IMG/VR virus record: IMGVR_UViG_3300007735_000804
Location: 1-64,000 of that record
Strand: one strand, 5' to 3'
DNA: 64,000 nucleotides
Shown here: positions 10,746 through 29,653 of the stretch, one piece after another
Layout of the letters: every line of letters starts with the position of its first letter
How positions within the stretch are numbered: position 1 is the stretch's first letter
Translations under genes and position numbers: made by a program
The notes under the pieces: model-generated
Told to the model about the DNA's origin: nothing
Database searches by the model: none
The model's input: the letters and a program-made list of their open reading frames with translations, nothing else

Positions 10746-10783
10746 ATTATATAGTAAAAATAAAGGGGCGTCAAGCCCCTTTT
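10746..10783 (-). promoter_or_regulatory. Sigma70 promoter with its -35 inside a terminator hairpin
   Basis: AAAGGGGC-TTGAC-GCCCCTTT; TTGACG-17-TATAAT. Confidence 0.75.
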
Positions 10784-10813: not shown

Positions 10814-11596
10814 TCATCCACCAGGATTGCTAATACGATTTAAATAGGGATCATAGGTCATTAAATCAGAAATTTGCATATCACATCCTTGAGTTTGCCA
10901 AAAATTAATCAGTGCATCATGACTTCCTTTATGATAAATATCAATATGCTCTGGATGAATAGCAGAACCCAAATCGAGACGATATAAGAATAAAGGAATT
11001 GAATATGTTTTACCAGATCCAAAAATAGTATCTTCTGAAACTGCCCTAGGTTTTACACCATTATCAAGTTTGAATTTATTACCGCGAATATGATTCTTGA
11101 TAATCTTTGCTGCGTGGTGACGTGTAATCAGATAAGCTGCCGCAGAGAAATCATTAATAAAATAATGGTGTAAGCGAACATGAATATTACCAGTACAAAT
11201 CGTAGTTAACTGCACACAGTCCCAATCATGAGGTAACTTTGATACAAAATCCTTCCAAGTAAAGTTCCAATATCTGGTAGGTTCTAAAGCAATGTCATCT
11301 TCAAAAATAAGAATATATTCGGCATCAGTATTCTCATAAAAATATTTAATTGCTTTCAAATGGGACATGCAGCATCCAATTTCATTTTGAGACATGTTAT
11401 CAGGAGCACGTCCAATTAAGAACTCACATACATCATCAGTTCTTCCATCAAAACCAGAAATTCTTAAATGATTTTCAATTCCCCAATAAGTAAATTGATC
11501 CTCCATATACTGACGACGATGATCATCAGCATCAAGATTCAACCATAAAATTTGTGGTAAACCATTTAATTTGTATAATGACTTATTTATGTCCAC
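10814..11596 (-). CDS. Glycosyltransferase family 25
   Basis: INL...RR, EIGCCMSHLKA and ILIFEDD motifs. Confidence 0.85.
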   Translation of the reverse strand: MDINKSLYKLNGLPQILWLNLDADDHRRQYMEDQFTYWGIENHLRISGFDGRTDDVCEFLIGRAPDNMSQNEIGCCMSHLKAIKYFYENTDAEYILIFEDDIALEPTRYWNFTWKDFVSKLPHDWDCVQLTTICTGNIHVRLHHYFINDFSAAAYLITRHHAAKIIKNHIRGNKFKLDNGVKPRAVSEDTIFGSGKTYSIPLFLYRLDLGSAIHPEHIDIYHKGSHDALINFWQTQGCDMQISDLMTYDPYLNRISNPGG

Positions 11597-12530
11597 GAAT
11601 CAGATTCTCCATAAACGGTAAATGATATTTTTGTAAAGTTGTATCCCAAGAAAATTGTTTAGAATATTCTACAATATTTTTTCTATTTTTTAAAGATACC
11701 TCTCTATTTTCTTTTATCTTTTCCCCTATAAAATTTATATCATTTATTTTATCTTCTGGTATTACAGTAATATATTCTTTACTTGTATCTAGATTTGCCG
11801 TTGCCCACTCCGAAATAACTAAACCCAATCCAGCAGATAAAGCTTCCATGCATACAAGAGCATGTGCTTCACCATCACTTAAAAGAACAAGGTTTGCAAA
11901 ATGCGTTAGATTATTATATAAGTCTTTCTTACTCCATTCGCCAAGATAATTTTTACTAGTGTCAAATCTACCATCTTCAATATTTCCAGCATAGTATAAT
12001 GAAGATATCTCCTGGAACATATATTGCCGTTTTCTATCCACAACTTTAGCAAGATAAAGGCTTTTATCAGAGTGCTCTGGGGTGTCAGTCACTTTAAAAT
12101 TTTCTGCATTTACCCCATTAGGTGTTACAAATATTTTTTCTTTTGGAATACCAAGATTTGAATACAATGTTGCAATCTCTTGAGATAATGCAAAAATATT
12201 AGGTTGAATCATTGGAAAGTAAGCAAGTTTTTGCCAATACCCTCCAATCAATTGAGGTCTACCCAAGTATCCATAATGAGTAGTAATTGCTGTTGGAAAT
12301 CTTAAGTGAGGATAAAGAACAACATAATCATCATACTGAATGTGTACAAAGTCTGGATTGAATGCATTAATCTCTTTCAATGCTTCATTAAGATCTGTTG
12401 TATTAACAATCTGAACATCATGTCCCATTTGCTTGTATGAAAGATTCATCTCCCATACAAGAATTTCAACTGCACCCCATCCTGTTGGAGGAATAGGGGA
12501 TAAACCAGGTCCAACTAATGTAATTTTCAT
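11583..12530 (-). CDS. GT-B (GT4-like) glycosyltransferase
   Basis: IPPTGWGAVE, PNGV, EAHALVCMEALSAG. Confidence 0.85.
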   Translation of the reverse strand: MKITLVGPGLSPIPPTGWGAVEILVWEMNLSYKQMGHDVQIVNTTDLNEALKEINAFNPDFVHIQYDDYVVLYPHLRFPTAITTHYGYLGRPQLIGGYWQKLAYFPMIQPNIFALSQEIATLYSNLGIPKEKIFVTPNGVNAENFKVTDTPEHSDKSLYLAKVVDRKRQYMFQEISSLYYAGNIEDGRFDTSKNYLGEWSKKDLYNNLTHFANLVLLSDGEAHALVCMEALSAGLGLVISEWATANLDTSKEYITVIPEDKINDINFIGEKIKENREVSLKNRKNIVEYSKQFSWDTTLQKYHLPFMENLIRGHK

Positions 12531-13492
12531 GTCAACTCTGTGATATTTTTTTCATAAAGTTTAACCAAACTTTCCCAAGAGAAGGTATTGGCGGCATAAT
12601 CTCTGATATCTTTTCTCATTTCAATAGATATTTTTCTATTTTCATCAATTGCTTTCGAAACATAATCAATGTCACTCCAATGCTCATCATCAATAATAGT
12701 GACATATGGTTCATTAGGAAGTTCATGTGCAGCCCACTTTGATGATACAACTCCAAGACCTGCCATCATACCTTCTTTAATGCAAAGAGGTGTTCCATTC
12801 TCACCATCAGATAAAAGAACTATATTTGCATAATCAGTTAGATGATCTAATTTGTATTGATGTTCCCATTCACCAAGATAATTTTTATTAGGATCAAATG
12901 GTGTAGTGTTTGTATACTTACCCACAAAATCTAGTGTATCAATCTGCTGATAAAGATACTGCCTTTTTCTTAATTCAATTTTAGCAAGATAAAGCGATCT
13001 ATTTGGTTTTATGCAAATATTTTTAAATGCGATTTCTTTATGATTTGCACCGTTTTGACAAATCCTTAATTTACTTTCGTCTGCCCCAGCATTCTTAAAT
13101 GCATTGTAATCTTTTTGAGAAATACAAAAATTATAGTATGTTTTATTTTTTGCTAGAAAATCAAAAACTGGTTTATAACCATACCGATTATGAATCTCTG
13201 GACGTTCAATATACGCATGATGACTACTGATTGCAATCTTTGCATTAGGTTGCAATTCTTTAATCCTATCCAGAATCTGATAGAACATATCATAATGAAG
13301 ATGAATGAAATCATATTGATCACTTACAAAATAATCAATAATTTCTTCAATATCGGGGGTGTTAATAATTACTCCCTCATGACCTAACTCACCCAATTCT
13401 TTTGCATACTCCCAGATTAAAATTTCAACTGCCCCCCAACCATTGGTTGGGATCTCCATAAGTCCTGGACCAATAAGTGCTATCTTCATCAA
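12527..13492 (-). CDS. GT-B (GT4-like) glycosyltransferase, paralogue of the previous gene
   Basis: IPTNGWGAVE, ENGTPLCIKEGMMAG. Confidence 0.85.
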   Translation of the reverse strand: MMKIALIGPGLMEIPTNGWGAVEILIWEYAKELGELGHEGVIINTPDIEEIIDYFVSDQYDFIHLHYDMFYQILDRIKELQPNAKIAISSHHAYIERPEIHNRYGYKPVFDFLAKNKTYYNFCISQKDYNAFKNAGADESKLRICQNGANHKEIAFKNICIKPNRSLYLAKIELRKRQYLYQQIDTLDFVGKYTNTTPFDPNKNYLGEWEHQYKLDHLTDYANIVLLSDGENGTPLCIKEGMMAGLGVVSSKWAAHELPNEPYVTIIDDEHWSDIDYVSKAIDENRKISIEMRKDIRDYAANTFSWESLVKLYEKNITELT

Positions 13493-14211
13493 TAAAGCTC
13501 CTTATACGCATGTACTAAAGTAAATTCAGAATTTCTAAAATCTGGTGTCTTCCAGGTTTCAGTTAAATTTGTGTTGATCGTATACTCTTTACCACAAACA
13601 AAATAAGCAATCTGCATATAGAGATCTAGCCACCCAAATCTATGATCCATAGTATTTAAAATCAAATCAAAATCATCATCAATAAAATCATAAATTTTAT
13701 GATAGTTGTTCAAGAATGTTTCAATATTAAAGATACTGCCGCCGCCAGCACCATACCAATCAACATTAGGTTGAGCACCGTACTTTGTTTTAATGTGATC
13801 TAACAATGCTGGAGAAATCTTATTGCCTGGAACATCAAAACCAGCACATTCCCATATTGGATCAATTTTAACTTCACCTTGAGTAAGTACATCATCCTCC
13901 ATCATGATCATATGAGTGCCATCATTATTAGCAACATGCTTTGCAGCTTCTCTAAAATGATGCAACCAATGAAGTGATTCATCTTTTGTAAAACCATATA
14001 CCCCAGAAGGATCACCCCAATTCCTTCTGCCAATTCTCATATAGGAGTGTACATAGTTGCAGTTATATTTTTCAGCAAGATCCGAATAATCGACTCCACC
14101 ATCACAAATAATTGTGTATGGATTATTTGGATAATACTTGCGAAATTCTTGAAGGACAAATTCTGTTGCTCTTTTATTTTGAAAAACAGTATGAAAACAT
14201 CCGAAAGTCAT
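13489..14211 (-). CDS. Putative GT-A glycosyltransferase
   Basis: IICDGG and MMEDDV motifs; island context. Confidence 0.6.
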   Translation of the reverse strand: MTFGCFHTVFQNKRATEFVLQEFRKYYPNNPYTIICDGGVDYSDLAEKYNCNYVHSYMRIGRRNWGDPSGVYGFTKDESLHWLHHFREAAKHVANNDGTHMIMMEDDVLTQGEVKIDPIWECAGFDVPGNKISPALLDHIKTKYGAQPNVDWYGAGGGSIFNIETFLNNYHKIYDFIDDDFDLILNTMDHRFGWLDLYMQIAYFVCGKEYTINTNLTETWKTPDFRNSEFTLVHAYKELY

Positions 14212-14213
14212 TT

Positions 14214-14993
14214 TTAATTTCCTTTTCTATAGTAGGGTTCAATGTCATCTCTATACAACCAAAACCAATGTGGTTCACCTGGAGGTGTTGGTTGAACATC
14301 AGGGATCATTCCTTTATGGTCATAACTAAAAGGTCCATTATAAAAACTAAACGATTTAGGATTATTCATCCCTACCCATTTTTCAAAATTCATTCTTGAG
14401 ATTGGACCAAAATCTCTAGAATCTTGTGGAAAAGCATCATTAATTGGATGGTGTAAAGTTCTAATATAAGAAGCATTAGACCACCAAAAATTACCACTCA
14501 TATGTGGCCATGGATCAATACAATAGTTTACACCAGAAACATCATGTGAGTCAAGCTTATTTACAGCATCTTTCCAATTATCAATGACACCCCATTCCAT
14601 AAAGTGTCTCCAACTATTAATTGCCCTAAACTTTCTATCAGAATAGTGATCTCTTGCACCAGCAAGATGACTCATACCTTTGGTATGAAAATAAAGAACT
14701 TTAATATTTGGATTATATGTACATTCTTCATAGAGATGTTTTAGAGTAAATCCTTCATATTGATCGTCAGTATTAGATACTTCTAAAACTCTTACCCAAT
14801 CATAAAGAGAAACAAACTCTGCAATTCTCGATCCTTGCTCACCGTTGATTGCACAATAAAATCTTGCTTCATCTAAAATCCCAGATCGATAAACACGTTT
14901 GAGTTGTTCGTCAACCATTAACTTCCAAAGATCAGTATTTGATGGACTCCAAATATGATAATAAATTGATAGATTCTTATCCATAATTACCAC
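14214..14993 (-). CDS. Putative glycosyltransferase-like protein
   Basis: YEGFTL, VLYFHTKG, SGNFWW. Confidence 0.55.
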   Translation of the reverse strand: MVIMDKNLSIYYHIWSPSNTDLWKLMVDEQLKRVYRSGILDEARFYCAINGEQGSRIAEFVSLYDWVRVLEVSNTDDQYEGFTLKHLYEECTYNPNIKVLYFHTKGMSHLAGARDHYSDRKFRAINSWRHFMEWGVIDNWKDAVNKLDSHDVSGVNYCIDPWPHMSGNFWWSNASYIRTLHHPINDAFPQDSRDFGPISRMNFEKWVGMNNPKSFSFYNGPFSYDHKGMIPDVQPTPPGEPHWFWLYRDDIEPYYRKGN

Positions 14994-15727: not shown

Positions 15728-15736
15728 TAATAAACC

Positions 15737-16534
15737 TCAAATTTTTAAGTCTTTTAAAAAGTGTTGACAAGACCAAGAAAAATATTCTTTAACCTTTGTA
15801 CAATCTAAATTTACGCAAGTTGTTTTTTGATTGCTTTTTTTAACTGTAATATCAAGTCTTCGAAGAGAAGCTATAATATCTATTATATCACAGATTTTAT
15901 AACTTTCATTACCAACCAAAAATGTAAAATGTTTAGTATCCATTTTTTTATAGATTGCCTTTAATATAAGTTCAACCAAATCTTCCACATGAATAACATC
16001 AACAATTGTATTAAGATTGGTATAAATCTCTACTTTTTCTTCTGCTGTTAAAAGTTTATCAATCAAACCATTTACTCTATTATTAACTGGTTTTCCAGAA
16101 TAAACATTGCTAACTCTAAATGCAATACTAGTAAATGAATATTTGTTGTGTAAAATTTCTACATAATTTTCCAAAAGAATTTTATGCGCCCCATATATTG
16201 ATTTTGGTCTTGGCGTAACATTTTCATTGATTACCTCATTAATTATTGAACTATGAAGATCTCCAGCAGAAGATAAGAATATAATTTTTCCATGAGGATT
16301 GGTTTGCAAATAATTTTCAAAGATTCGCAAAGGAATAAAAACATCACTAAAAAATGATTGCTCCACATCATCTATTGTATTTCTTGGAGTAGTTGATGAA
16401 GAAAGATGTACTAAAGTTGAATTAGAAGAAAATTTTACATCTGGTACATTATTTCTAAAAGTTATTGGATTTACTTTTATCTTATTAGATAAACACTTCC
16501 CTATCAAACCATTTGAACCAGTTACATAGATCAT
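15737..16534 (-). CDS. NAD-dependent epimerase/dehydratase (extended SDR)
   Basis: VTGSNGLIG, YGAHK. Confidence 0.85.
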   Translation of the reverse strand: MIYVTGSNGLIGKCLSNKIKVNPITFRNNVPDVKFSSNSTLVHLSSSTTPRNTIDDVEQSFFSDVFIPLRIFENYLQTNPHGKIIFLSSAGDLHSSIINEVINENVTPRPKSIYGAHKILLENYVEILHNKYSFTSIAFRVSNVYSGKPVNNRVNGLIDKLLTAEEKVEIYTNLNTIVDVIHVEDLVELILKAIYKKMDTKHFTFLVGNESYKICDIIDIIASLRRLDITVKKSNQKTTCVNLDCTKVKEYFSWSCQHFLKDLKI

Positions 16535-17389
16535 TTAAATAATTTTCCATCCTTCACAATAAAGATCTTTAGTATTGTGTTGTGAGTATGCTGATCCAAA
16601 CCATTTACTTGGAGCAACAATTTTTTTATTTGGATTTTTCTGCAACCAAGAACCCCACCAACTTAAACTACTATTAGCAATAATAGCATGAGAACACAAA
16701 GACATTAAACACAAATCAATATATGGAACTAAAGCACCATCAGAATACTTATGTTCTGGTTCAGAGAACATAAATCTTTCATCCTTAAAAAACTCTTGCT
16801 CTTTAACCCAATCAATTGAATCTGAAAAAACAAGAAATTTCATATCGTTTGGAAATTCTTGTATTGCTTTTTCATAATATTCAATTGACTGGACGGGATG
16901 TTGATCCTGTAGATTTACATATGCCCATTTGAATCCACGTTTATCTGCAAGATTAGGATCTCCTCTTCTAACATGAATAAAACCTATCTCTTCTCCATCA
17001 AACTGAGTCATAAATTCAAGACAGGGTTCTAACCAATCTTTCTTAAATGTAAAATCTTCTCTTACTTGATTTTTAATTTTTTTAAAATATTTTTCAGTTT
17101 GAAAAAAACCAACTAAAGAAACATCGTCTTGACAGTTATTAAACAAATCTTCGTCGAAATGAAAATGTTTTTCCTGTGCTACTTTTTCTGTCTGAATAAA
17201 ACCAATTTTCTTATTAGTGCTTAATTCAAAGCATTCAAGCAAACCATAATTATCAATTTGATATTCATCATGTTGTGGAGGAATAGTATATTCCAATCCA
17301 CAATTTGAAGCGATTCCCTTCAATGAAGCATATTGAAACATTTGATTACCTAATCTTCCAAGTGTTCCAATAGAATTATTACCAATCAT
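16535..17389 (-). CDS. Alpha-1,2-fucosyltransferase, GT11
   Basis: GRLGNQMFQYA, IHVRRGD, IIANSSLSWWG. Confidence 0.92.
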   Translation of the reverse strand: MIGNNSIGTLGRLGNQMFQYASLKGIASNCGLEYTIPPQHDEYQIDNYGLLECFELSTNKKIGFIQTEKVAQEKHFHFDEDLFNNCQDDVSLVGFFQTEKYFKKIKNQVREDFTFKKDWLEPCLEFMTQFDGEEIGFIHVRRGDPNLADKRGFKWAYVNLQDQHPVQSIEYYEKAIQEFPNDMKFLVFSDSIDWVKEQEFFKDERFMFSEPEHKYSDGALVPYIDLCLMSLCSHAIIANSSLSWWGSWLQKNPNKKIVAPSKWFGSAYSQHNTKDLYCEGWKII

Positions 17390-21416: not shown

Positions 21417-21423
21417 TTTAAAA

Positions 21424-22616: not shown

Positions 22617-22924
22617 AGTTCTTCAATCCTCAATGCTTTATCTTCGATGAACAGATCGTAAAATGGTTTATCTGCTCGCAACTCGTGGTACTTTGCACCC
22701 CACTCTGCAAGTTGCTGCCTAGTTAGTTCGGTCCAGTCAATCTGTTTTCTAGATCCACGGGCAGTCCAATAAACGATTGTATGACCTTCCTCATAGAGTT
22801 TATTGATCTTATCTATATTTTCTTGAATGGGTTTTGCTTTGGTATAATCGTGAGTTGTGCCAAAGTCAACAGAAGTTTCCCGATGACAAATGGTTTCATC
22901 AATATCAACATAAATGACTTTCAT
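22613..22924 (-). CDS. HAD-family phosphatase (capsule-biosynthesis type)
   Basis: DIDETI, WTARG, KP.YDLFIEDK. Confidence 0.8.
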   Translation of the reverse strand: MKVIYVDIDETICHRETSVDFGTTHDYTKAKPIQENIDKINKLYEEGHTIVYWTARGSRKQIDWTELTRQQLAEWGAKYHELRADKPFYDLFIEDKALRIEEL

Positions 22925-23601
22925 TGATACATTGTTCTCCTATAAATTTCATTTGGGCAGGTATCAACATCAGAAACTTCTTGTTTGGTCAAGAACTTAA
23001 TTCCGCCCAGAAGTTTTGCTCCAATAAAAATATCAGCAGATTTTTCACACATTAAAGTTGCAGCAACACAATCTTTTTTAGATGCAGATGCTGTTATTAT
23101 ACCATGATTTTGAAGTAGAATCAACTTCGGAAAGAAACCTTCATGATCTACAAATGCAGAAACATGTTTTTCAACTAACTTTAAAATTGCCTCTCCAGGG
23201 GGAGCATAAGGAACTGTACAAGACTTTGTTCCGTTTCTTACAATTTGATCAGGAAACCATCTATGGCTAGCAAACTGATGCAACTGACTTGAACAAAGAA
23301 TTTTAGTTGTATGTGGTGGATGTGTATGTGCAATAAAATTAATCTCTGGAAAAGTCTTCATAATCCAAGCATGAAATGACGTTTCAATGCTTGGTTTTTT
23401 ATGTGAAGGATTTAACTGAACTCCATGAATATTACATAGAGTTAGATCTTCCTCTACTAGAGTATGAAGACTTGTCCCACTTGCCTTAATTAAGAATGTA
23501 TTTTCATTTTGGCGCATAGAAACATTTCCTTCGCCACAAATAGTGTAGTCACATATTTCATATGATAGATCTAGAAGTTCTTTAATTGGTGAAATAGTCA
23601 T
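22921..23601 (-). CDS. Class II aldolase/adducin family protein
   Basis: EGNVS, KPSIETSFH, HTHP, LQNHG. Confidence 0.88.
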   Translation of the reverse strand: MTISPIKELLDLSYEICDYTICGEGNVSMRQNENTFLIKASGTSLHTLVEEDLTLCNIHGVQLNPSHKKPSIETSFHAWIMKTFPEINFIAHTHPPHTTKILCSSQLHQFASHRWFPDQIVRNGTKSCTVPYAPPGEAILKLVEKHVSAFVDHEGFFPKLILLQNHGIITASASKKDCVAATLMCEKSADIFIGAKLLGGIKFLTKQEVSDVDTCPNEIYRRTMYQ

Positions 23602-25138
23602 TTTTATAAGAGTAGGGGTGCCAGTTTACTTTATTAAAAAATGTTTGCCAATATTTATAGGTGTTTAAATCATTGGGTGTTCCCCAACAAATATATTCAT
23701 CAACTTCAAAATTTCTAACAATATATCCTAGTTCAATTGCTTCATTGAGAAGATTATCAATATAAAATTCACCATTGGTTTTTATATTTTTTTCATATAA
23801 ATTTTTAAGGGAATTGAGATAAATGTCTTTATTTCTAAAGAACATTGTTCCAACAATTGCATATTCCTCTAAAGGATTATTACCAGTGAAATTTTTAACA
23901 TTTACTTTTCTAATAATATTTTCAGCATCTACATCTAACCAAGAATACATATTGGGATTATAATAACTTGTATAATTGTTTCTATAACTCCAAACTATAA
24001 TATCATTATCAGTATCACCAACCAATTCTAAAAATTTATCTGCATCGTAAAATACTCCATTATCACAAGTAGAAACAAGGATAGATCCATCACCACAATG
24101 TTCTAGAATCTTCTCCGTAGTGCAAGCCTGACCTTCCAGAACTTCATCAATCCATAAAACTTCCCCTTTTGGGTGTGGTGATGTTTGTCTTCTTAAGCAA
24201 GCATAGATTGTCCTATCAGTTTTAGGTAAGCAGCGAACTGCTTGTTCAAACATATTCTTATCATTAACTTGAATGAATGGTTTTGGTTGCTCATAACCTT
24301 CTTTAGAAAATCTACTACCAGCACCTGCCATAGGAAGTGCAAGAGTGCAGTTCTCAAGTCTAACTTCTTTTTGCCCCTTTAATGCTTTAGAATAATAATC
24401 AGACCACTTCAAATACATATCCAAATCAAGAGGAGTTCCCCACTGAAGCATATGGGAAATTTCATAAACTAAAGAAGTAAGATTATCATTATACAAAAAA
24501 TTATAAATTAGACTTACATAATATTCTCCACTTAAATTTACATCATCATCCATCATCTTTTGAAAATATTTTTTAATATACTTTCCTTTCCCGAAATAAT
24601 ATGTTCCAGTGGAAGCATATTCGTTCATCTTATTGTCAGTAAATGGATGTTTCTCCTGAACTTCTAAAATTTTATTAGAATCATCTACCTTACAAAAAGC
24701 ATAGTTATCACTACCCAACATGTGGGGGTGAAATCCAGTATAACAAACTACACATCCATCACAATTAGATTCATTCACAAACTTTTCAAAATCATCATAA
24801 TCCCAATACATTGAGAAGTCGCAGTAGTTAATAATGACTTGCTCTTCATCATCTATAAGATCATATACAAATGAAGTTGTATAGACTGGTCCTTTTTTGT
24901 GATTTGATATAATTTCTACATAACTATTATCAACTAAAGATTCTAATAAAAATTTTACATTATATAATTCTTCGTGAATTTTATTTACTATAAAAATAAA
25001 TTCAGAATTTTTTGGATACAAATCAATGATGTGCTCAATAACCTTTTTACCATCAATCTCAATGAGATATTTTGGAATTTCATAACCGACGTTTGCAAAT
25101 CGGTTACTCATTCCAGACATGGGTATTATGACTTTCAC
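23582..25138 (-). CDS. Tandem two-domain sugar-phosphate nucleotidyltransferase
   Basis: Two copies of the PMxGxxxRF...PK motif; GEYY/GEFY and WGTP twice. Confidence 0.82.
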   Translation of the reverse strand: MKVIIPMSGMSNRFANVGYEIPKYLIEIDGKKVIEHIIDLYPKNSEFIFIVNKIHEELYNVKFLLESLVDNSYVEIISNHKKGPVYTTSFVYDLIDDEEQVIINYCDFSMYWDYDDFEKFVNESNCDGCVVCYTGFHPHMLGSDNYAFCKVDDSNKILEVQEKHPFTDNKMNEYASTGTYYFGKGKYIKKYFQKMMDDDVNLSGEYYVSLIYNFLYNDNLTSLVYEISHMLQWGTPLDLDMYLKWSDYYSKALKGQKEVRLENCTLALPMAGAGSRFSKEGYEQPKPFIQVNDKNMFEQAVRCLPKTDRTIYACLRRQTSPHPKGEVLWIDEVLEGQACTTEKILEHCGDGSILVSTCDNGVFYDADKFLELVGDTDNDIIVWSYRNNYTSYYNPNMYSWLDVDAENIIRKVNVKNFTGNNPLEEYAIVGTMFFRNKDIYLNSLKNLYEKNIKTNGEFYIDNLLNEAIELGYIVRNFEVDEYICWGTPNDLNTYKYWQTFFNKVNWHPYSYKNDYFTN

Positions 25139-25788
25139 AATTCAAAAGTGTCTTTAATTTCTTGAATTAGTTCTGCATTATTTGAAGCAACACCCAATCC
25201 ACAAGAATTTGTAAAATTAACTTTGGGAACTTCTAATTGAGAAAAGAAAAGACCAACAGTATCAGGATTAGAAACAGTATCGTGAAACAAAATTACACCA
25301 TCCTCTTTAAGGAGAGGTGCCCAAGTCTCACAATCATTTTTACAGTTTTGGTAGTCATGAAGACCATCGATATGTAAAAGATCTATTTCTTTATCCCAAG
25401 TTTTTGCAACATCATCAAAATACCCTTTGATGATCTCCAAATTATTCAGTTTAAGCTTTTCTTTAGCCGATATTACAAATTCATAATCACGATCTTGTCG
25501 AATTCCATGCTTTGAAATATCAAAACAATCTATACCATAAACTACATTTTCTTGACACATTGCCATGACAAATGCAGAATAACCATAGTCAACTCCCAAT
25601 TCAACTGTAATTTCAGGTTTGATTCTTTCAATCAACCATTTAACAAATTCATAGTGACCTTTTGGAGGAACATTCCAAGCAGATGGAATTGCTCCTAGAA
25701 TTTCACTCACATTGTCATCATCGAGAGATAAAACATATTCTCTCCAATCTTCTCTTTTATTTTCAAACCAAGAAAAATTTTCAACCAT
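25135..25788 (-). CDS. Class I SAM methyltransferase (Methyltransf_24-like)
   Basis: VELGVDYGYS, LHIDGLHDY, ILFHD. Confidence 0.85.
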   Translation of the reverse strand: MVENFSWFENKREDWREYVLSLDDDNVSEILGAIPSAWNVPPKGHYEFVKWLIERIKPEITVELGVDYGYSAFVMAMCQENVVYGIDCFDISKHGIRQDRDYEFVISAKEKLKLNNLEIIKGYFDDVAKTWDKEIDLLHIDGLHDYQNCKNDCETWAPLLKEDGVILFHDTVSNPDTVGLFFSQLEVPKVNFTNSCGLGVASNNAELIQEIKDTFEL

Positions 25789-26824
25789 TTAATTGCTCCT
25801 TAATCCAATTGTAAGTTTTACTAATTCCTTCTTCAAGGGTTTGGGAATAATCCCACCCAAGTTTTTCACGAATCAAATCATTATTAGAGTTACGTCCACG
25901 AACACCCAAAGGACCAGGGACATGATTCTTCTCAACTTTTTTACCAGCAACTTTTGCAGCAGTATCTGCAAGTTGATTAATAGTGACCATTTCTTCAGAT
26001 CCAATATTCACAGGACCGAGAAAATCAGATTGCATTAAACGACGAGTTGCTTCAATACATTCATCAATGTAGAGGAATGAACGAGTCTGCTTACCATCAC
26101 CCCAGATCTCAATTTCACCAGCGTCTTCAGTAAGTTCTGCAACCTTACGGCAAATTGCTGCAGGTGATTTTTCTTTACCACCAGTCCAAGTTCCTTCAGG
26201 TCCAAAAATATTGTGATAACGAGCAACTCTTACAGGAATCCCGTAGTTGCGGTGATAGGCAAAGTAAAGACGTTCAGAGAAAAGTTTTTCCCAACCATAC
26301 TCTGAATCAGGGGCAGCAGGGTAAGCATCGGATTCTTTTAGACCTGGGTTATCTACATCCATCTGTGCATATTCTGGATACATGCAAGCAGATGAAGAAT
26401 AGAAAATCTTTGTTGTATTTTTTCCACACTTCTCATTCAATTCTTTAACTGAACGAAGAACATTTAAATTGATAGTCGCAGAATTATTCATAACATCTGC
26501 ATCATGATCACCCGTAAAAATATATCCAGCGCCGCCCATGTCAGCAGCAAACTGATAGATCTCATCAAAGGGTTGGATGTAACGATAAGGAACAGAGTTA
26601 TAAAAGTTACCTCTGTCACCTTTATATTCAACAACCTTACTTACAAAATTTGCATTAGTAAGATCTCCTCTAATAAATTCATTTGCTTCATGTTTAGAAT
26701 ATTCTGGATACTTAAGGTCTACACCACGAACCCAATAACCTTCGGATCGCAGTCTACGCACCATATGACTTCCAATAAAACCACCAGCACCAAGTACAAG
26801 TGCTTTCTTGACGTATTGACTCAT
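25781..26824 (-). CDS. GDP-mannose 3,5-epimerase-like SDR
   Basis: GAGGFIG, AADMGGAG, SSACMYP, YGWEK, GVRGRNS. Confidence 0.88.
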   Translation of the reverse strand: MSQYVKKALVLGAGGFIGSHMVRRLRSEGYWVRGVDLKYPEYSKHEANEFIRGDLTNANFVSKVVEYKGDRGNFYNSVPYRYIQPFDEIYQFAADMGGAGYIFTGDHDADVMNNSATINLNVLRSVKELNEKCGKNTTKIFYSSSACMYPEYAQMDVDNPGLKESDAYPAAPDSEYGWEKLFSERLYFAYHRNYGIPVRVARYHNIFGPEGTWTGGKEKSPAAICRKVAELTEDAGEIEIWGDGKQTRSFLYIDECIEATRRLMQSDFLGPVNIGSEEMVTINQLADTAAKVAGKKVEKNHVPGPLGVRGRNSNNDLIREKLGWDYSQTLEEGISKTYNWIKEQLNG

Positions 26825-26856
26825 AGATAAAAATTACTCCTAGTATATATTCTACA

Positions 26857-27657
26857 TTACAAACAAGTAGTTTGCAAGCCCTTTTCTAAAGAGATACTTT
26901 GATTGAATCCCAAAGATTTAAGTTTACCAACATTCAAGTAATAATCAAGTGCTGGATTAGGTAGATAATTAATTGTACTTTTGCTATCTAATATTTTTTT
27001 ACTATATTCAACAGCATCTTTAAATTCTGTAATTACTCCAGTTCCTATATTATAAATCTGATTAGTTTTCGAGTTATTCATTAATTGATAAAAAGCATTG
27101 CAGACATCATCTACAAAAATAAAATCTCTTTTGAACTTGCCATAGTTGTAAAGATCTACATCTTGATCATTTTTTAATAGATTAATGATATAACCAATAA
27201 CATTTTTCTTAAAAGAGCAATTCTTATCTTTACCATAAACATTTGCTAATCGAAAGATACGATACTTAACTCCAAATGTTTCGCAGAATGTTATTAACAT
27301 CTGCTCTGCAGTTCTTTTAGTTATTGAATAAAACCCTTTAGGATTACAAGAATCTTCCTCAGAAGCATTAATCACTTCAGAACCATAGACAAATCCAGAA
27401 CTGACAAAATTAAAAGTGATATTTTCACTTCTACAGTTATCTAGAACATCCATCAATACATTTAGATTTGTATTAATATCTACGTGAAGGTCTTCGTAGA
27501 TATTATGATTGGTGGTTGTGCTGATGCAATACAAGATATTATTAGTCTCTGGAACTTTCTGGTCTCTTGGAATTTTTACTCCACCATAAAGTTCGCAGAA
27601 CCGACCACCAATAAATCCAGTCGCACCAAATACAGATGTGTCACTCATACTTATCAC
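26857..27657 (-). CDS. NAD-dependent epimerase/dehydratase
   Basis: GATGFIG, YSITK, RDFIFVDD. Confidence 0.85.
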   Translation of the reverse strand: MISMSDTSVFGATGFIGGRFCELYGGVKIPRDQKVPETNNILYCISTTTNHNIYEDLHVDINTNLNVLMDVLDNCRSENITFNFVSSGFVYGSEVINASEEDSCNPKGFYSITKRTAEQMLITFCETFGVKYRIFRLANVYGKDKNCSFKKNVIGYIINLLKNDQDVDLYNYGKFKRDFIFVDDVCNAFYQLMNNSKTNQIYNIGTGVITEFKDAVEYSKKILDSKSTINYLPNPALDYYLNVGKLKSLGFNQSISLEKGLQTTCL

Positions 27658-28177
27658 AATCCTTAAATGATACTCCCTTAAGATCTTTGTCAGAAAGAAT
27701 CGGAGATGCTAAATTCCAATTAATATTCAAATCTTCATCATTCCACAAAAGAGTACGTTCATGTTCTTGGTAACGATAATCAGTTACCTTATATAATACT
27801 TCTGCTTGATGTGAGAGAACACAAAAACTATGAGCAAATCCAGGTGGAACCCATAACTGTTCAGATCCTGGCGAAAGTTTAACTCCTATCCATTCTCCAA
27901 ATGTTGGGGAACTTTTACGCAAATCAACAATTACATCATAAATCTCACCAGCAATACATCGAACAAGTTTACCTTGTGCATGTTCAATCTGATAATGCAA
28001 ACCTCGTAAAACATTTTTTGTAGAAACTGAATGACAGTCCTGTACAAATTCATAATTTCCAATAATTTTTTGAATATCACGAAGATTAAAAGACTCAGTG
28101 AAAGAACCTCGACTATCTTCAAAAATATTTGTGCTAATAATGTATGCGTCTTTTAGACTAGTTCCGATTGCGTTCAT
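27641..28177 (-). CDS. rmlC: dTDP-4-dehydrorhamnose 3,5-epimerase
   Basis: DSRGSF, LRGLHYQ, VPPGFAH, LSDKD. Confidence 0.93.
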   Translation of the reverse strand: MNAIGTSLKDAYIISTNIFEDSRGSFTESFNLRDIQKIIGNYEFVQDCHSVSTKNVLRGLHYQIEHAQGKLVRCIAGEIYDVIVDLRKSSPTFGEWIGVKLSPGSEQLWVPPGFAHSFCVLSHQAEVLYKVTDYRYQEHERTLLWNDEDLNINWNLASPILSDKDLKGVSFKDCDKYE

Positions 28178-29084
28178 ACCATTTAATTGTTTTATCAAGT
28201 CCATTTTCAAAAGTAAATCTAGGAGACCAGTCCAATTTATTTTTTATCTTTGTAATATCTGTAGAATAACGACGATCATGTCCCAGTCTATCATCTACAT
28301 ATTCTATCATATCTTCAGTCATATTCATACGCTCTAAAATCATCTTAACCAAATCAATGTTGCGAAGTTCGCATTCACCACCTATATTATACTTTTCACC
28401 AATAGAACCCCTTTCAGCAATTGCTGAAAGTGCCTCACAATGATCTTGAACATATAACCAATCCCGAATTTGTTTACCATCACCATAGATAGGAACTTTC
28501 TTACCAACTAAAAGATTGCTAATAGTTTTAGGTATCATTTTTTCATGATACTGCCTTGGTCCATAGTTATTAGAACAGTTTGTAATTATGGTGGGCAACC
28601 CATAAGTATTATGATATGCCATTACAAAATGATCACTTGCTGCTTTAGATGCCGAATATGGATTCCTTGGAGAATAATTAGACTCTTCAGTGAATGAACC
28701 CGCATTTATGGAACCATAAACTTCGTCTGTAGAAATGTGAAGAAACTTTTCAATTCCATTCTTAACAGCAAGATTTAAAAGATTAACTGTTCCCTCAATA
28801 TTTGTATGAATGAATTCTGAACAATTTTTAATTGAGTTATCAACATGACTTTCTGCAGCAAAATGAAAAATTGTTTTAATTTTGTGCTTATCAAAAACAT
28901 ATTGACAACTCTGTTCAGAAGCAATATCAATTGTATAAAATTTGACTGGATCTGGTATGTTGTGCCAGTCTGCAGCATATGTCAATTTATCAATACAAAT
29001 AAGTTCTTCATCAGTTTTTGTCGATAAGTGATGAAGAAAATTACTTCCAATAAATCCTGCACCACCTGTAACTAAAATTGCCAT
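28158..29084 (-). CDS. rmlB: dTDP-glucose 4,6-dehydratase
   Basis: GGAGFIGSN, AAESHVD, STDEVYG, PYSASK, CSNNYGP. Confidence 0.95.
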   Translation of the reverse strand: MAILVTGGAGFIGSNFLHHLSTKTDEELICIDKLTYAADWHNIPDPVKFYTIDIASEQSCQYVFDKHKIKTIFHFAAESHVDNSIKNCSEFIHTNIEGTVNLLNLAVKNGIEKFLHISTDEVYGSINAGSFTEESNYSPRNPYSASKAASDHFVMAYHNTYGLPTIITNCSNNYGPRQYHEKMIPKTISNLLVGKKVPIYGDGKQIRDWLYVQDHCEALSAIAERGSIGEKYNIGGECELRNIDLVKMILERMNMTEDMIEYVDDRLGHDRRYSTDITKIKNKLDWSPRFTFENGLDKTIKWYERNRN

Positions 29085-29087
29085 TGA

Positions 29088-29588
29088 TTAATCACTTCTT
29101 AATGAATATTTTTCTAAAAGTTGTGGGGAGTATTGTTCTAAAACAGGTGCATCTCCACTCTCTTCTCTTTTTTTCTTCTCAAGATCATATACTCTATTTC
29201 TAATTTCAGTTGAAGAATACTTATGTTTTCTCAAATGATAAAATAAGTCTATATCATGATCAATACAATACTGTTTACCAGTAAAGTCTCTATCTACATA
29301 CTCTTCACTCAAAAAACGGATATGAATTGTTTGAGTTTGAATTAGATTAAGTAAATCTTCTTCAGTCTCATAAACTAGAATCTCATCAACATATTTACAT
29401 GCTTGAAGTTGAACATAACGTTCATATACAGATTGAGCTGGTTTATTTTTAACACCAGGTCTATCAATTGTTGGATCAACTTGAAGTGCAACTTTAAGAT
29501 AATCACACATTTCTTTTTCCATTTTGAGCATTGTAACATGCCCAGCATGAAATAAATCAAACGAGCTACAATTAAATCCTATTTTCAT
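29088..29588 (-). CDS. Cytidylyltransferase, TagD-like
   Basis: FDLFHAGH (HxGH), SSTEIR. Confidence 0.85.
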   Translation of the reverse strand: MKIGFNCSSFDLFHAGHVTMLKMEKEMCDYLKVALQVDPTIDRPGVKNKPAQSVYERYVQLQACKYVDEILVYETEEDLLNLIQTQTIHIRFLSEEYVDRDFTGKQYCIDHDIDLFYHLRKHKYSSTEIRNRVYDLEKKKREESGDAPVLEQYSPQLLEKYSLRSD

Positions 29589-29653
29589 ATGAGTATTGTT
29601 TTTTTTATAATTATACTAAAAAAGATGGGTTTATGCAACCCACCTTCATGTAC

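What the first reader, a model, noticed from the sequence alone, without database searches (positions are those of the whole stretch)
10814..29588. 19-kb, 23-gene glycan-building island
Seen: a contiguous, tightly coupled run of about 9 glycosyltransferase-like genes, six SDR sugar enzymes (gmd, GME-like, rmlB and three others), rmlC, two methyltransferases, nucleotidyltransferases, a phosphatase and an aldolase. No flippase, polymerase, ligase or other membrane protein is evident. Established: P-SSM2 has a comparable LPS-like cluster. Inference: the lack of export machinery favours a cytoplasmic acceptor, such as Ser/Thr-rich virion fibres or DNA, over host LPS conversion.
Basis: partly seen in the sequence, partly recalled or inferred. 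Interest (0 to 1): 0.7.

Follow-up and report, generated by a model that had tools for sequence, protein, structure and literature searches.

The report
Cyanophage sugar-chain-building gene island
A freshwater T4-like cyanophage carries a 19-kb block of 23 soluble enzymes that make unusual sugars and link them into a chain; it is a new example of the long-known but unexplained cyanophage "LPS gene clusters", and what the chain is attached to is still unknown.

Summary
Window 10814-29588 holds 23 abutting minus-strand ORFs, with no gap over 32 nt and a terminator-like hairpin at each end. They are 9 glycosyltransferases, 6 intact SDR enzymes (GMD, GME, RmlB and three others), RmlC, a sugar 3-C-methyltransferase, an O-methyltransferase, two nucleotidyltransferases, a HAD phosphatase and a class-II aldolase.

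No membrane, flippase, polymerase, ligase, priming or ABC-exporter gene turned up in the island, in the complete 213-kb genome, or in about 300 kb of related islands.

The island sits at the hli/psbA hypervariable locus, syntenic with the S-SM2 and S-SRM01 islands. It is therefore a new member of the "LPS gene cluster" class described for P-SSM2, S-SSM7 and S-SM2. The genes are under purifying selection, so they are not stuffer DNA.

A five-gene core (g17-g13) is conserved in all relatives. Cyanobacteria couple the same aldolase and nucleotidyltransferase pair to GtrA/GtrB and polytopic membrane proteins (one ALG3/GT-C-like); the phages use soluble enzymes instead.

The acceptor remains inferred: virion proteins about 0.45, host LPS core or O-chain exported by host machinery about 0.3, DNA under 0.05.

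The parts
29621..29647 (-). terminator-like hairpin just upstream of the island, followed by TATAAT about 20 nt before the g23 ATG
29088..29588 (-). g23: cytidylyl/adenylyl-transferase-like protein (resembles TagD and RfaE domain II), 166 aa
   Evidence: Pfam CTP_transf_like E 8e-12. NCBIfam rfaE_dom_II and g3p_cytidyltrns both score below their cut-offs.
28158..29084 (-). g22: dTDP-glucose 4,6-dehydratase RmlB
   Evidence: TIGR01181 420 bits, cut-off 365
27641..28210 (-). g21: dTDP-4-dehydrorhamnose 3,5-epimerase RmlC
   Evidence: TIGR01221 222 bits, cut-off 156
26857..27657 (-). g20: compact extended SDR. Candidate 4-reductase standing in for RmlD (inferred).
   Evidence: Pfam Epimerase E 2e-29; GxxGxxG and YxxxK intact; only generic PDB hits
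25781..26824 (-). g19: GDP-mannose 3,5-epimerase (GME) homologue
   Evidence: PDB 2c59 E 9e-88, nearly full length
25135..25788 (-). g18: SAM-dependent methyltransferase (Methyltransf_24; weak match to rhamnosyl O-methyltransferase/CmcI)
23582..25138 (-). g17: fused double nucleotidyltransferase. N-terminal half is GlmU/RmlA-like, C-terminal half MobA/IspD-like. First gene of the conserved core.
   Evidence: phrog_3980; over 3,000 metagenomic homologues; present in every related island
22921..23601 (-). g16: class-II aldolase/epimerase family protein (best match an AraD-like subfamily)
   Evidence: 56-87% identical in relatives
22613..22924 (-). g15: minimal HAD phosphatase, 103 aa
   Evidence: weak matches to HAD_PNKP and the capsule-biosynthesis-phosphatase family; phrog_1238; 85-95% identical in relatives, dN/dS about 0.03-0.09
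22170..22616 (-). g14: mini GDPD-like phosphodiesterase-superfamily protein, 148 aa
   Evidence: Invariant H-R-G, E-N, E-x-D and H-D motifs. Family profile hits GDPD 3i10 at E 3e-5. Model pLDDT 96.7, and its best PDB folds are GDPDs. The domain also occurs fused to the double nucleotidyltransferase and to WavE/DUF7796 GTs.
21424..22173 (-). g13: WavE/DUF7796-like GT-A glycosyltransferase
   Evidence: Model pLDDT 95; Foldseek top hits are GT6, GT8 and GT31 GT-A enzymes. The gene at this position in relatives is Pfam WavE.
20391..21416 (-). g12: GDP-mannose 4,6-dehydratase
   Evidence: TIGR01472 520 bits, cut-off 415
19465..20394 (-). g11: GT-B glycosyltransferase of a virus-dominated family
   Evidence: Atlas structure neighbours TM 0.9 to viral GT families and 0.64-0.68 to GT1/GT4 families; Pfam Glyco_trans_1_2 below its cut-off
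18230..19465 (-). g10: NDP-4-keto-6-deoxyhexose 3-C-methyltransferase
   Evidence: Pfam Methyltransf_13/14; PDB TylC3 4rv9 E 2e-52, also TcaB9 and KijD1; hits in only 6 phage records
17379..18230 (-). g9: SDR, weakly Fcl-like. Candidate 4-ketoreductase of the GDP branch (inferred).
16535..17389 (-). g8: GT11 (alpha-1,2-fucosyltransferase family)
   Evidence: Pfam E 5e-24; phrog_2644; 46% identical to the S-SM2_215 gene (T4-GC 260)
15737..16534 (-). g7: compact SDR, GalE-like. An SDR also stands directly upstream of the GT6 in relatives, so g7 may supply its UDP-sugar (inferred).
   Evidence: SDR-GT6 adjacency in L005-L007
14987..15727 (-). g6: GT6 of the minimal, DXD-bearing cyanophage clade
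   Evidence: Pfam E 2e-15. NCBIfam Gltr_6 148.9 bits, below the 250 cut-off. Alignment to BoGT6a shows D-A-D where BoGT6a has N-A-N, a conserved catalytic Glu, and no BHB tail.
14214..14993 (-). g5: DUF8361 protein, GT-A-like; family nearly all viral
13489..14211 (-). g4: GT-A-fold glycosyltransferase of a viral family
   Evidence: Atlas; SseK/NleB match below the cut-off
12527..13492 (-). g3: GT4-like GT-B glycosyltransferase
   Evidence: Pfam Glyco_transf_4 E 1.6e-4, 22.2 bits, below the 28.5 cut-off; paralogue-like neighbour of g2
11583..12530 (-). g2: GT4-like GT-B glycosyltransferase
   Evidence: weak Agl16 match
10814..11596 (-). g1: GT25 glycosyltransferase, last gene of the island, next to hli
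   Evidence: Pfam E 1.5e-12; phrog_2835 E 2e-104; 64% identical to the S-SM2_216 gene (T4-GC 266) and 60% to the S-SRM01 gp312 gene, both also the last GT gene of their island
10762..10782 (-). terminator-like hairpin right after g1, overlapped by a sigma-70-like promoter (10774-10746) for hli

Best explanation
The island is one operon-like unit. It encodes a complete, entirely soluble glycan assembly line that works in the cytoplasm of the infected cyanobacterium.

Shown at family level:
1. A GDP branch: GMD (g12) with a sugar 3-C-methyltransferase (g10) and an SDR (g9). Together these could make a GDP-6-deoxy-(3-C-methyl)hexose.
2. GME (g19), which could make GDP-L-galactose or GDP-L-gulose.
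3. A dTDP branch: RmlB, RmlC and an SDR (g22-g20) for an L-rhamnose-type sugar, with an O-methyltransferase (g18).
4. A GalE-like SDR (g7) next to the GT6.
5. A five-gene core, g17-g13, found in all relatives. A double nucleotidyltransferase, a class-II aldolase/epimerase and a HAD phosphatase would make an activated unit of unknown identity. A mini-GDPD and a WavE-like GT-A would install it.

Nine glycosyltransferases then build the chain. From family-level specificities, GT25, GT11 and GT6 could add beta-Gal, alpha-1,2-6-deoxyhexose and an alpha-1,3-hexose. That would give a histo-blood-group-like end.

Inferred: because every enzyme is soluble and the phage lineage never carries carrier-priming, flipping or exporting genes, the chain is most likely put on proteins made in the cytoplasm. 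The likeliest targets are the phage's own virion proteins (fibres, baseplate or head decoration), as in chloroviruses, mimiviruses and mycobacteriophages. The island as a whole is a new member of the known cyanomyovirus 'LPS gene cluster' at the hli/psbA locus.
For: - Gene content and intact catalytic motifs.
- Single unit bracketed by terminator-like hairpins.
- Purifying selection. dN/dS is about 0.03-0.35 against five related loci, and pN/pS is 0.18 against a 99.8%-identical strain.
- Core g14-g17 present in all related islands that cover its position, at 52-95% identity.
- g14 domain fused elsewhere to the double nucleotidyltransferase or to WavE-like GTs.
- No membrane or export gene in the island, the genome or about 300 kb of relatives.
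- In the two cyanobacterial loci inspected, the g17 homologue stands next to GtrA, a GtrB-like GT2 and multi-TM proteins. One locus also has the class-II aldolase and an ALG3-like GT-C. The phages have soluble partners instead.
- The phage GT6 lacks the membrane-binding BHB domain (PMC3516806).
- GT families g4, g5 and g11 are 95-100% viral in the Atlas and include giant-virus members. g13 was found in 0 of 401, and the GT6 in 1 of 401, sampled cyanobacterial genomes.
- A GT-A-like 217-aa ORF lies between Ser/Thr-rich fibre genes. Its ACG-2014f homologue sits beside tail-collar fibre genes, a GT and an epimerase.
- Virion glycosylation by phage-encoded GTs is established in mycobacteriophages (Freeman 2023, cited in PMC12619734).
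Against: - No glycan has ever been reported on a cyanophage virion; my literature searches found none.
- The island lies among host-physiology genes (hli, psbA; porin and Dps in relatives), not in the structural module.
- GT25 and WavE are typically LPS-core enzymes, and GT11 with GT6 build O-antigens in bacteria.
- Peripheral GTs need no TM segment to act on lipid-linked acceptors, and host MsbA/Lpt or Wzm/Wzt could export the product.
- No recognisable protein-O-glycosyltransferase signature, and no acceptor motif in a structural protein, was shown.
- Expression timing is unknown. The one late-promoter motif inside the island is not conserved in relatives.
- The hydropathy scan is crude, and amphipathic membrane anchors would be missed.
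Confidence: 0.45

Rival explanations
1. Host envelope remodelling. The phage glycosyltransferases work at the cytoplasmic face of the inner membrane on the host's own lipid A-core or undecaprenyl-linked O-chain intermediates. The host's MsbA/Lpt, Wzx/WaaL or Wzm/Wzt then export the altered glycan. This would change the cell surface during the long latent period, to block superinfection, stop progeny sticking to debris, or evade grazers. It is the classical 'LPS gene' reading.
For: - GT25 and WavE-type families are LPS-core enzymes; GT11 with GT6 build O-antigens such as E. coli O86. These are family annotations plus established knowledge.
- The island lies among host-manipulating cargo genes at the hli/psbA locus.
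- Its content is hypervariable between close relatives, as in O-antigen arms races.
- The aldolase and nucleotidyltransferase cassette feeds an envelope-glycan route in cyanobacteria.
- This is the interpretation given in PMC1079782, PMC9602691 and PMC12801897.
Against: - By established knowledge, known phage systems that alter host LPS (Gtr, O-acetylases, Wzy variants) contain membrane proteins. None occurs here or in any relative.
- Nine GTs and about five sugar branches make a whole new glycan rather than a modification, yet no priming transferase is present.
- The phage GTs are largely virus-specific rather than host-like.
- The phage is of a lytic T4-like type.
Confidence: 0.3
2. Another cytoplasmic or secreted product. 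The enzymes would make a soluble oligosaccharide, a glycolipid or a glycosylated small molecule, or would glycosylate host proteins such as S-layer, pilin or porin precursors.
For: All enzymes are soluble. The 3-C-methyl and O-methyl deoxysugar branches are typical of natural-product glycosides; TylC3, TcaB9 and KijD1 are the nearest solved relatives of g10. Relatives carry SLH/OprB porin genes a few kb upstream.
Against: There is no aglycone-forming gene (PKS, NRPS or lipid synthesis) in the island. Nine GTs point to a long chain. There is no precedent in phages.
Confidence: 0.12
3. DNA hypermodification. The sugars would be attached to modified bases of the phage genome to evade restriction, as in T-even phages.
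For: It is a T4-like phage. A few Atlas feature neighbours of g11 (rank 76, score 0.95) carry the T4 beta-glucosyltransferase family. Diverse DNA glycans are known (Pyle 2024, cited in PMC12619734). PMC12801897 raises the idea.
Against: No thymidylate-synthase/dCMP-hydroxymethylase family gene exists in the complete genome, while the same search matched 10 of 14 control genomes. The predicted donors are GDP- and dTDP-6-deoxyhexoses, and GT6, GT11 and GT25 act on sugar acceptors. Nine GTs far exceed any known DNA glycan. The PF09198 search found nothing, but its control was silent too.
Confidence: 0.04
4. Non-functional 'stuffer' DNA that only fills the head (raised as a possibility in PMC3037559).
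For: GC content is lower (30-33%) than in the flanks, and the content is mosaic.
Against: All 23 frames are open and tightly coupled. Catalytic motifs are intact. dN/dS is well below 1. Natural variants in metagenome runs mostly lie 3 nt apart; in g9, 8 of 9 fall on third codon positions, by my count.
Confidence: 0.02

Closest known systems
'LPS gene clusters' of large T4-like cyanomyoviruses (P-SSM2, S-SSM7, S-SM2) near hli03 (Sullivan 2005 PMC1079782; Sullivan 2010 PMC3037559)
   Same: The phage type and the locus (next to hli/psbA) are the same, as is the mix of epimerases, transferases and synthases. Direct homologues in S-SM2 are g1 (T4-GC 266, 64%), g8 (T4-GC 260, 46%), g22 (T4-GC 265), g23 (T4-GC 304), g20 (T4-GC 308), g15 (T4-GC 306, 87%), g19 (72%) and g13-g17. 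The function is equally untested.
   Different: The gene set is mosaic. This island adds GMD, a 3-C-methyltransferase, RmlC, an O-methyltransferase, a GT6 and several viral GT families. It lacks S-SM2's transketolase, Zn-ADH, kinase and cysteine-dioxygenase-like genes (T4-GC 305, 307). The source is freshwater, river and lagoon metagenomes, not the open ocean.
Island gp296-gp312 of freshwater Synechococcus phage S-SRM01
   Same: The flanks are syntenic: porin and Dps on one side; hli, psbA, endonuclease VII, a phosphoesterase, HNH and baseplate/fibre genes on the other. Both islands end with a GT25 next to hli. GMD, GT11 and GT25 are 45-62% identical.
   Different: My tblastn found no g13-g17 homologue in S-SRM01. 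Its record annotates a SIS-domain protein, an NDP-sugar synthase, a 3' phosphatase, a NodZ fucosyltransferase and GT2s instead.
Virus-encoded virion glycosylation: chlorovirus PBCV-1 capsid glycans, mimivirus fibrils, mycobacteriophage capsid and tail tube (Freeman 2023)
   Same: The virus brings its own soluble nucleotide-sugar enzymes (GMD, rhamnose-type and methylated 6-deoxysugars), many soluble GTs and methyltransferases, and no membrane machinery. g5's family (DUF8361) also occurs in giant viruses.
   Different: No glycan has been shown on any cyanophage particle, and no acceptor protein is identified here. The resemblance is one of logic, not demonstrated homology of the pathway. The details on chloroviruses and mimivirus are from my own knowledge.
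E. coli O86 / Bacteroides ovatus blood-group-like antigens (GT11 fucosyltransferase with GT6 WbnI or BoGT6a)
   Same: A GT11 and GT6 pair predicts a Fuc-alpha-1,2-Gal acceptor capped by an alpha-1,3-hexose. The GT6 fold and catalytic Glu are conserved.
   Different: The phage GT6 has DXD, implying metal dependence, and no BHB membrane anchor, like the P-SSM2 and Parachlamydia clade (PMC3516806). There is no Wzx, Wzy or priming enzyme. Donor sugar is unknown; it scores below the cut-off of NCBIfam 'family 6 glucosyltransferase'.
Gtr-type (GtrA/GtrB/GtrC) serotype-converting systems, and the cyanobacterial aldolase, double nucleotidyltransferase, GtrA, GT2 and GT-C operons found here
   Same: The cyanobacterial operon in L106 shares with the phage core both the class-II aldolase and the double nucleotidyltransferase (40-42% identity) that would make the donor. 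In L107 only the nucleotidyltransferase was seen.
   Different: The phage has no GtrA, GtrB or GT-C. It uses a HAD phosphatase, a mini-GDPD and a soluble WavE-like GT-A instead.
Proposed GDP-virenose pathway of Coxiella burnetii (GMD, C-methyltransferase and reductase; PMC3539893, from its title and abstract line only)
   Same: GMD stands near a TylC3-type 3-C-methyltransferase and an Fcl-like SDR (g12, g10, g9), separated from g10 only by g11. This suggests a GDP-6-deoxy-3-C-methylhexose.
   Different: The product is not known here. The solved relatives of g10 act on dTDP-sugars, so it might equally use the RmlB product.

Membership tests
Cyanomyovirus 'LPS gene cluster' at the hli03/psbA locus | Lies in a T4-like cyanomyovirus genome | tested here: met
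   The nrdA/nrdB/primase region is about 80% identical to S-SRM01 and 72-78% to other cyanomyoviruses. Baseplate and tail-fibre PHROGs, psbA and hli are present.
Cyanomyovirus 'LPS gene cluster' at the hli03/psbA locus | Positioned next to hli, in a variable cargo region | tested here: met
   g1 abuts hli, and psbA lies about 1.3 kb further on. The islands of S-SM2 and S-SRM01 have the same position.
Cyanomyovirus 'LPS gene cluster' at the hli03/psbA locus | Shares the co-occurring T4-GCs 260, 265, 266, 304, 305, 307 and 308 | tested here: inconclusive
   Homologues of the S-SM2 genes for T4-GC 260, 265, 266, 304 and 308 were found at 23-64% identity. None was found for 305 or 307.
Wzx/Wzy-dependent O-antigen or capsule gene cluster | Priming phosphoglycosyltransferase, Wzx flippase, and Wzy polymerase or WaaL ligase | tested here: not met
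   PF02397, PF00953, PF01943 and PF04932 found nothing in the whole genome, while the controls matched. No polytopic ORF was seen.
ABC-transporter-dependent O-polysaccharide cluster | Wzm permease and Wzt ATPase | tested here: not met
   PF01061 found nothing. PF00005 gave only P-loop fragments below the cut-off, in unrelated large ORFs.
Gtr-type phage seroconversion module | GtrA flippase, GtrB GT2 and a polytopic GtrC | tested here: not met
   PF04138 found nothing. PF00535 gave only a 13.6-bit hit in a 217-aa ORF of the fibre module. No polytopic ORF was seen.
T-even-type DNA glucosylation | A hydroxymethyl-pyrimidine synthase (gp42, thymidylate-synthase family) to create the acceptor base | tested here: not met
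   PF00303 found nothing in the CheckV-complete genome, while 10 of 14 control genomes matched.
T-even-type DNA glucosylation | Alpha- or beta-glucosyltransferase of the T4 type | tested here: inconclusive
   PF09198 found nothing, but no control genome matched either. Only a few Atlas feature neighbours of g11 carry this family.
Virus-encoded virion-protein glycosylation systems | Virus-encoded soluble GTs together with nucleotide-sugar enzymes | tested here: met
Virus-encoded virion-protein glycosylation systems | Glycan covalently bound to a virion structural protein | not testable with these tools
   This needs purified particles. The phage is known only from metagenomes.
CAZy GT6, metal-dependent minimal (cyanophage/Parachlamydia) clade | GT6 catalytic domain with a DXD motif and catalytic Glu, about 240 aa, no BHB domain | tested here: met
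   Pfam GT6 57 bits against a cut-off of 25. D-A-D aligns to the N-A-N of BoGT6a, the Glu is conserved, and the protein is 246 aa long. Clade definition is from PMC3516806.
NCBIfam NF041524 'family 6 glucosyltransferase' | Score over the curated cut-off of 250 bits | tested here: not met
   148.9 bits, so the donor sugar must not be assumed to be glucose.
Glycerophosphodiester phosphodiesterase (GDPD) family, for g14 | Catalytic H-R, E-N, E-x-D and H-D motifs, and a full (beta/alpha)8 barrel of about 220-250 aa | tested here: inconclusive
   The motifs are invariant in 43 homologues. The profile hits GDPD 3i10 at E 3e-5 and the best folds are GDPDs at TM 0.47-0.61. The protein has only 148 aa, so it is a truncated barrel. 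No Pfam GDPD hit was obtained.

The most novel reading that the evidence does not exclude
Large cyanomyoviruses coat their own particles with a self-made, hypervariable glycan. The glycan would carry rare sugars (3-C-methyl- and O-methyl-6-deoxyhexoses, L-galactose) and a histo-blood-group-like end. It would be built wholly in the cytoplasm by virus-specific enzymes, around a conserved five-gene core whose product cyanobacteria attach to their envelope by a membrane route. If so, the 20-year-old 'LPS genes' of cyanophages would be a bacteriophage counterpart of giant-virus capsid glycosylation. Island variability would then reflect selection on the virion surface (grazing, aggregation, adsorption, defence) rather than on the host surface.
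Probability: 0.4. Interest if true: 0.8.

Novelty: new member of a known kind. Interest (0 to 1): 0.5.

Why it matters
Cyanophage "LPS clusters" take up 10-20% of the largest cyanomyovirus genomes and are very common in aquatic metagenomes. The core enzyme g17 alone has more than 3,000 homologues. Their purpose has been an open question since 2005, and one paper even suggested they might be stuffer DNA.

This island shows that the genes are under selection. The lineage never carries export machinery. A conserved soluble core replaces a membrane-bound route that cyanobacteria use. Together these turn "host LPS or virion?" into a sharp question that cultured relatives can answer.

If virions are glycosylated, that would affect how we think about phage decay, grazing, aggregation and adsorption in lakes and oceans. 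The enzymes (GME, 3-C-methyltransferase, a metal-dependent minimal GT6, a mini-GDPD) are also of interest for glycan synthesis.

Tried and rejected
- **Late-promoter timing.** TATAAATA is a credible T4-type late promoter in this genome. All 18 copies are on the coding strand, and 13 lie 19-51 nt before an ORF start. The single copy inside the island, 51 nt before g16, falls in the T-Y-K-Y codons of g17 and is absent from all divergent relatives. I therefore draw no timing inference.
- **Expression from public runs.** Three runs labelled RNA-Seq hold only scattered, low-depth, near-identical fragments, and the tool flags them as probably DNA. Expression remains untested.
- **Collagen-type acceptor for the GT25.** The idea came from GT25 collagen galactosyltransferases and mimivirus L230. 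No Gly-X-Y run of 6 or more repeats exists in any ORF of the genome, so I dropped it.
- **Host identification through psbA.** This was uninformative and served only to obtain genome handles.
- **Sequence searches on g4, g5 and g11.** PDB, Pfam, NCBIfam and PHROG searches gave nothing significant. Their assignment rests on Atlas feature and structure neighbours, which are leads rather than proofs.
- **The 217-aa GT-like ORF in the fibre module.** It scores below the Pfam cut-off (14 bits). It is scattered across cyanophages, rhizobiophages, Caulobacter phages and pelagiphages. It is suggestive only.
- **Product of the g17-g13 core.** I considered heptose, CDP-alditol, Kdo-like and phosphocholine-type routes. 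None fits all five proteins, so I left it open.

Full report
**What is there**

The window is the first 64 kb of a single-contig, 213,274-bp IMG/VR virus record that CheckV rates 100% complete.

It is a T4-like cyanomyovirus:
- The nrdA/nrdB/primase region is about 80% identical to freshwater Synechococcus phage S-SRM01, and 72-78% to S-SKS1, P-TIM68, S-SM2 and others.
- The flanks of the finding carry psbA, hli, endonuclease VII, an HNH gene and tail-fibre/baseplate proteins.

Public runs that hold the island nearly letter for letter are viral, river, lake, lagoon and sediment metagenomes. The phage is therefore uncultured and of fresh or brackish water.

From 29588 down to 10814 there are exactly 23 minus-strand ORFs. 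They overlap by 1-53 nt or are 0-32 nt apart. A strong terminator-like hairpin stands just before the first gene (29647-29621) and another just after the last (10782-10762). The second is overlapped by a near-consensus sigma-70-type promoter for hli. GC content falls to 30-33% across the island, against 37-41% in the flanks.

**Gene content**

Three genes pass curated equivalog cut-offs: GMD (g12), RmlB (g22) and RmlC (g21).

Other assignments:
- g19 matches plant GDP-mannose 3,5-epimerase over its whole length (2c59, E 9e-88).
- g10 matches the solved sugar 3-C-methyltransferases TylC3, TcaB9 and KijD1 over its whole length (E 2e-52).
- g7, g9 and g20 are divergent extended SDRs. All six SDRs keep GxxGxxG and YxxxK.
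- g18 is a Methyltransf_24 enzyme with a weak rhamnosyl-O-methyltransferase match.
- g17 is a 518-aa fusion of a GlmU/RmlA-like and a MobA/IspD-like nucleotidyltransferase. g23 is a TagD/RfaE-domain-II-like transferase. g16 is a class-II aldolase/epimerase. g15 is a 103-aa HAD phosphatase.

Glycosyltransferases:
- Pfam supports g1 (GT25), g2 and g3 (GT4-like; g3 below the cut-off), g6 (GT6) and g8 (GT11).
- Atlas neighbours support g4 (a viral GT-A family), g5 (DUF8361, GT-A-like, also found fused to GT17 in giant viruses) and g11 (a viral GT-B family).
- g13 has a model with pLDDT 95 whose best PDB and Swiss-Prot matches are GT-A enzymes of GT6, GT8 and GT31. The gene at this position in relatives is Pfam WavE.

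That makes nine.

Its invariant H-R-G, E-N, E-x-D and H-D residues, profile match (3i10, E 3e-5) and predicted fold are those of glycerophosphodiester phosphodiesterases. It has only 148 residues.

**No membrane or export machinery**

- A 19-residue Kyte-Doolittle scan gives no convincing TM segment in any of the 23 proteins. The highest value, 1.69, equals what soluble GMD gives.
- Across all ORFs of the genome, the only polytopic protein over 200 aa is psbA.
- Family searches of the six-frame genome found no Wzx, Wzy/WaaL, Bac_transf, WecA/MraY, ABC-2 permease or GtrA, and no ABC ATPase above its cut-off. Control genomes matched in every case.
- The same scan over 16 related loci, about 300 kb, found no polytopic protein on the coding strand.

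The caveat is that the predictor is crude.

**Known kind**

Sullivan et al. described 24 "LPS genes" in P-SSM2 and proposed cell-surface alteration (PMC1079782). In 2010 they placed such clusters "near hli03" in S-SSM7, S-SM2 and P-SSM2 and asked whether they are functional or "stuffer DNA" (PMC3037559). [quoted passage not shown]

The island here lies at that same locus. S-SM2 genes 191-216 and S-SRM01 gp296-312 are syntenic islands. Both have a GT11-like gene close to their end and a GT25 as their last GT gene, near hli, as here. Homologues of five of the seven T4-GCs that co-occur in P-SSM2, S-SM2 and S-SSM7 are present. It is a new member of a known kind.

**What this analysis adds**

1. 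*The genes are functional.* dN/dS is about 0.03-0.35 against five related islands. Against a 99.8%-identical strain there are 17 synonymous and 12 non-synonymous changes, pN/pS 0.18. Variants seen in metagenome contigs are mostly spaced by multiples of three.

2. *The island is a mosaic around a conserved core.* g14-g17 occur in every related locus that covers their position, at 52-95% identity. The other genes come and go. g17-like proteins number over 3,000 in metagenomes, mostly on phage-sized contigs.
   - The g14 domain is found fused to the double nucleotidyltransferase (P0282) and to WavE/DUF7796 GTs (P0362, P0363, P0378).
   - This ties g17 through g13 into one functional unit: make an activated compound, then install it.

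3. *Cyanobacteria use the donor-making half differently.* Among 401 sampled cyanobacterial genomes, three carry full-length g17 homologues at 40-42% identity.
   - In the two loci inspected, GtrA and a GtrB-like GT2 lie directly beside the gene. One locus also has a class-II aldolase-family gene and 10-11-TM proteins, one with an ALG3-like GT-C match.
   - Cells thus couple the nucleotidyltransferase (in one locus with the aldolase too) to the classical polyprenyl-phosphate, flippase and periplasmic-transferase route. The phages couple the pair to soluble enzymes.

4. *GT25, GT11 and GT6, with an SDR next to the GT6, recur together in relatives*. By family-level specificities they could build a beta-Gal, alpha-1,2-6-deoxyhexose, alpha-1,3-hexose end, which is a histo-blood-group-like epitope.
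   - The GT6 has D-A-D where Bacteroides BoGT6a has N-A-N, keeps the catalytic Glu, and has no BHB membrane-binding tail.
   - That matches the cyanophage/Parachlamydia clade of PMC3516806.
   - It scores below the cut-off of NCBIfam's "family 6 glucosyltransferase", so the donor sugar is open.

5. *GMD stands close to a 3-C-methyltransferase and an SDR (g12, g10, g9, with the GT-B g11 between g12 and g10).* This suggests a GDP-6-deoxy-3-C-methylhexose, by analogy with the proposed virenose route (PMC3539893). The methyltransferase has hits in only six phage records. This step is inferred, and the enzyme might instead use the RmlB product.

**The acceptor**

*DNA* is unlikely. There is no thymidylate-synthase/hydroxymethylase family gene. 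The predicted donors are GDP- and dTDP-6-deoxyhexoses. Several GTs belong to families that act on sugar acceptors.

*Host LPS* stays possible. GT25 and WavE-type enzymes normally extend lipid A-core at the inner face of the membrane, where host MsbA/Lpt would export the product. GT11/GT6 products on undecaprenyl carriers could use host Wzx or Wzm/Wzt. The island also lies among host-directed cargo genes.

*Against host LPS:*
- By established knowledge, known phage systems that alter host LPS contain membrane proteins.
- Nine GTs and about five sugar branches amount to a new glycan, yet there is no priming enzyme.
- The phage swapped the membrane half of the cyanobacterial cassette for soluble enzymes.
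- Several GT families are 95-100% viral in the Atlas, and some are shared with giant viruses.
- g13 was found in 0, and the GT6 in 1, of 401 sampled cyanobacterial genomes.

*In favour of virion proteins,* by association only:
- Large Ser/Thr-rich (25-28%) fibre and baseplate proteins lie 5 kb downstream and across the contig ends.
- A 217-aa ORF with a DxD-like motif and a PHROG "glycosyltransferase" match sits between fibre genes.
- Its homologue in ACG-2014f lies beside tail-collar fibre genes, a GT and an epimerase.

My estimates are: virion or other phage protein about 0.45, host envelope about 0.3, another product about 0.12, DNA about 0.04, non-functional about 0.02.

**Checks that led nowhere**

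- The late-promoter motif in front of g16 is not conserved.
- The RNA-labelled runs are probably DNA.
- There are no collagen-like repeats that would suit a GT25 of the collagen type.
- psbA was too conserved to name a host.
- The product of the g17-g13 core could not be deduced.

**Verdict**

The island is a new member of a known but functionally unexplained class. Its main value is that it sharpens a testable question, which cultured relatives can answer.

Noticed in passing
G000:C1:200303-200956 (minus strand; L002:1114-1767), outside the window: A 217-aa ORF sits between Ser/Thr-rich tail-fibre-like genes. It has a 'CLDADV' DxD-like motif, a Pfam GT2 hit below the cut-off, phrog_1574, and a PHROG 'glycosyltransferase' hit (E 3e-8). 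Homologues are scattered in ACG-2014f (next to tail-collar fibre genes), Cr30, phiM12, pelagiphages and others.
   Followed up: partly
L106 (G183:C23:30000-49999) and L107 (G098:C29:1-7197): In L106 the order is class-II aldolase, double nucleotidyltransferase (40-42% identical to g17), GtrA and a GT2, with 10-11-TM proteins nearby, one of which pairs an ALG3-like region with a PRK-family kinase domain. L107 repeats the nucleotidyltransferase-GtrA-GT2 order beside an 8-TM ORF. This looks like an undescribed envelope-glycan decoration system making the same unknown donor.
   Followed up: partly
whole genome G000; window copies at 8110, 23652, 33109, 42959, 49254, 62125: TATAAATA occurs 18 times, always on the minus (coding) strand. 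Thirteen copies lie 19-51 nt upstream of an ORF start, which fits T4-type late promoters.
   Followed up: yes
window 8351-9541, 7658-8086, 5576-5947: psbA here is one uninterrupted ORF. It is followed by an endonuclease VII gene and an HNH endonuclease gene. In S-SRM01 the syntenic psbA is split by a homing-endonuclease gene.
   Followed up: no
window 6677-7387: A 236-aa metallophosphoesterase. Its syntenic S-SRM01 gene is annotated 'UDP-2,3-diacylglucosamine diphosphatase' (LpxH-like). Here the only PHROG matches are weak phosphoesterase/exonuclease ones. If it were truly LpxH-like it would bear on the host-LPS reading.
   Followed up: no
G000:C1:106546-118497 and 97739-104926, outside the window: Two giant minus-strand ORFs of 3,983 and 2,395 aa with about 21-22% Ser+Thr. 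They are presumably baseplate or fibre proteins and were not examined.
   Followed up: no
window 17-3304, 3666-5519, and G000 200960-213274: The contig start cuts through a run of large Ser/Thr-rich (25-28%) tail-fibre/baseplate genes. The fibre module therefore continues from the end of the record into the window, on the same strand as the island.
   Followed up: partly
L005 6440-7330, L007 3602-5167; S-SRM01 gp283: Related phages carry SLH/OprB porin-like and Dps/ferritin genes a few kb upstream of their islands. These are outer-membrane-type host genes carried in a phage.
   Followed up: no
L109 (G332:C1:149316-149978): This was the only GT6 homologue (30% identity) in 401 sampled cyanobacterial genomes. 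It lies in a 2.3-Mb genome, the size of a picocyanobacterium. Its context was not examined.
   Followed up: no
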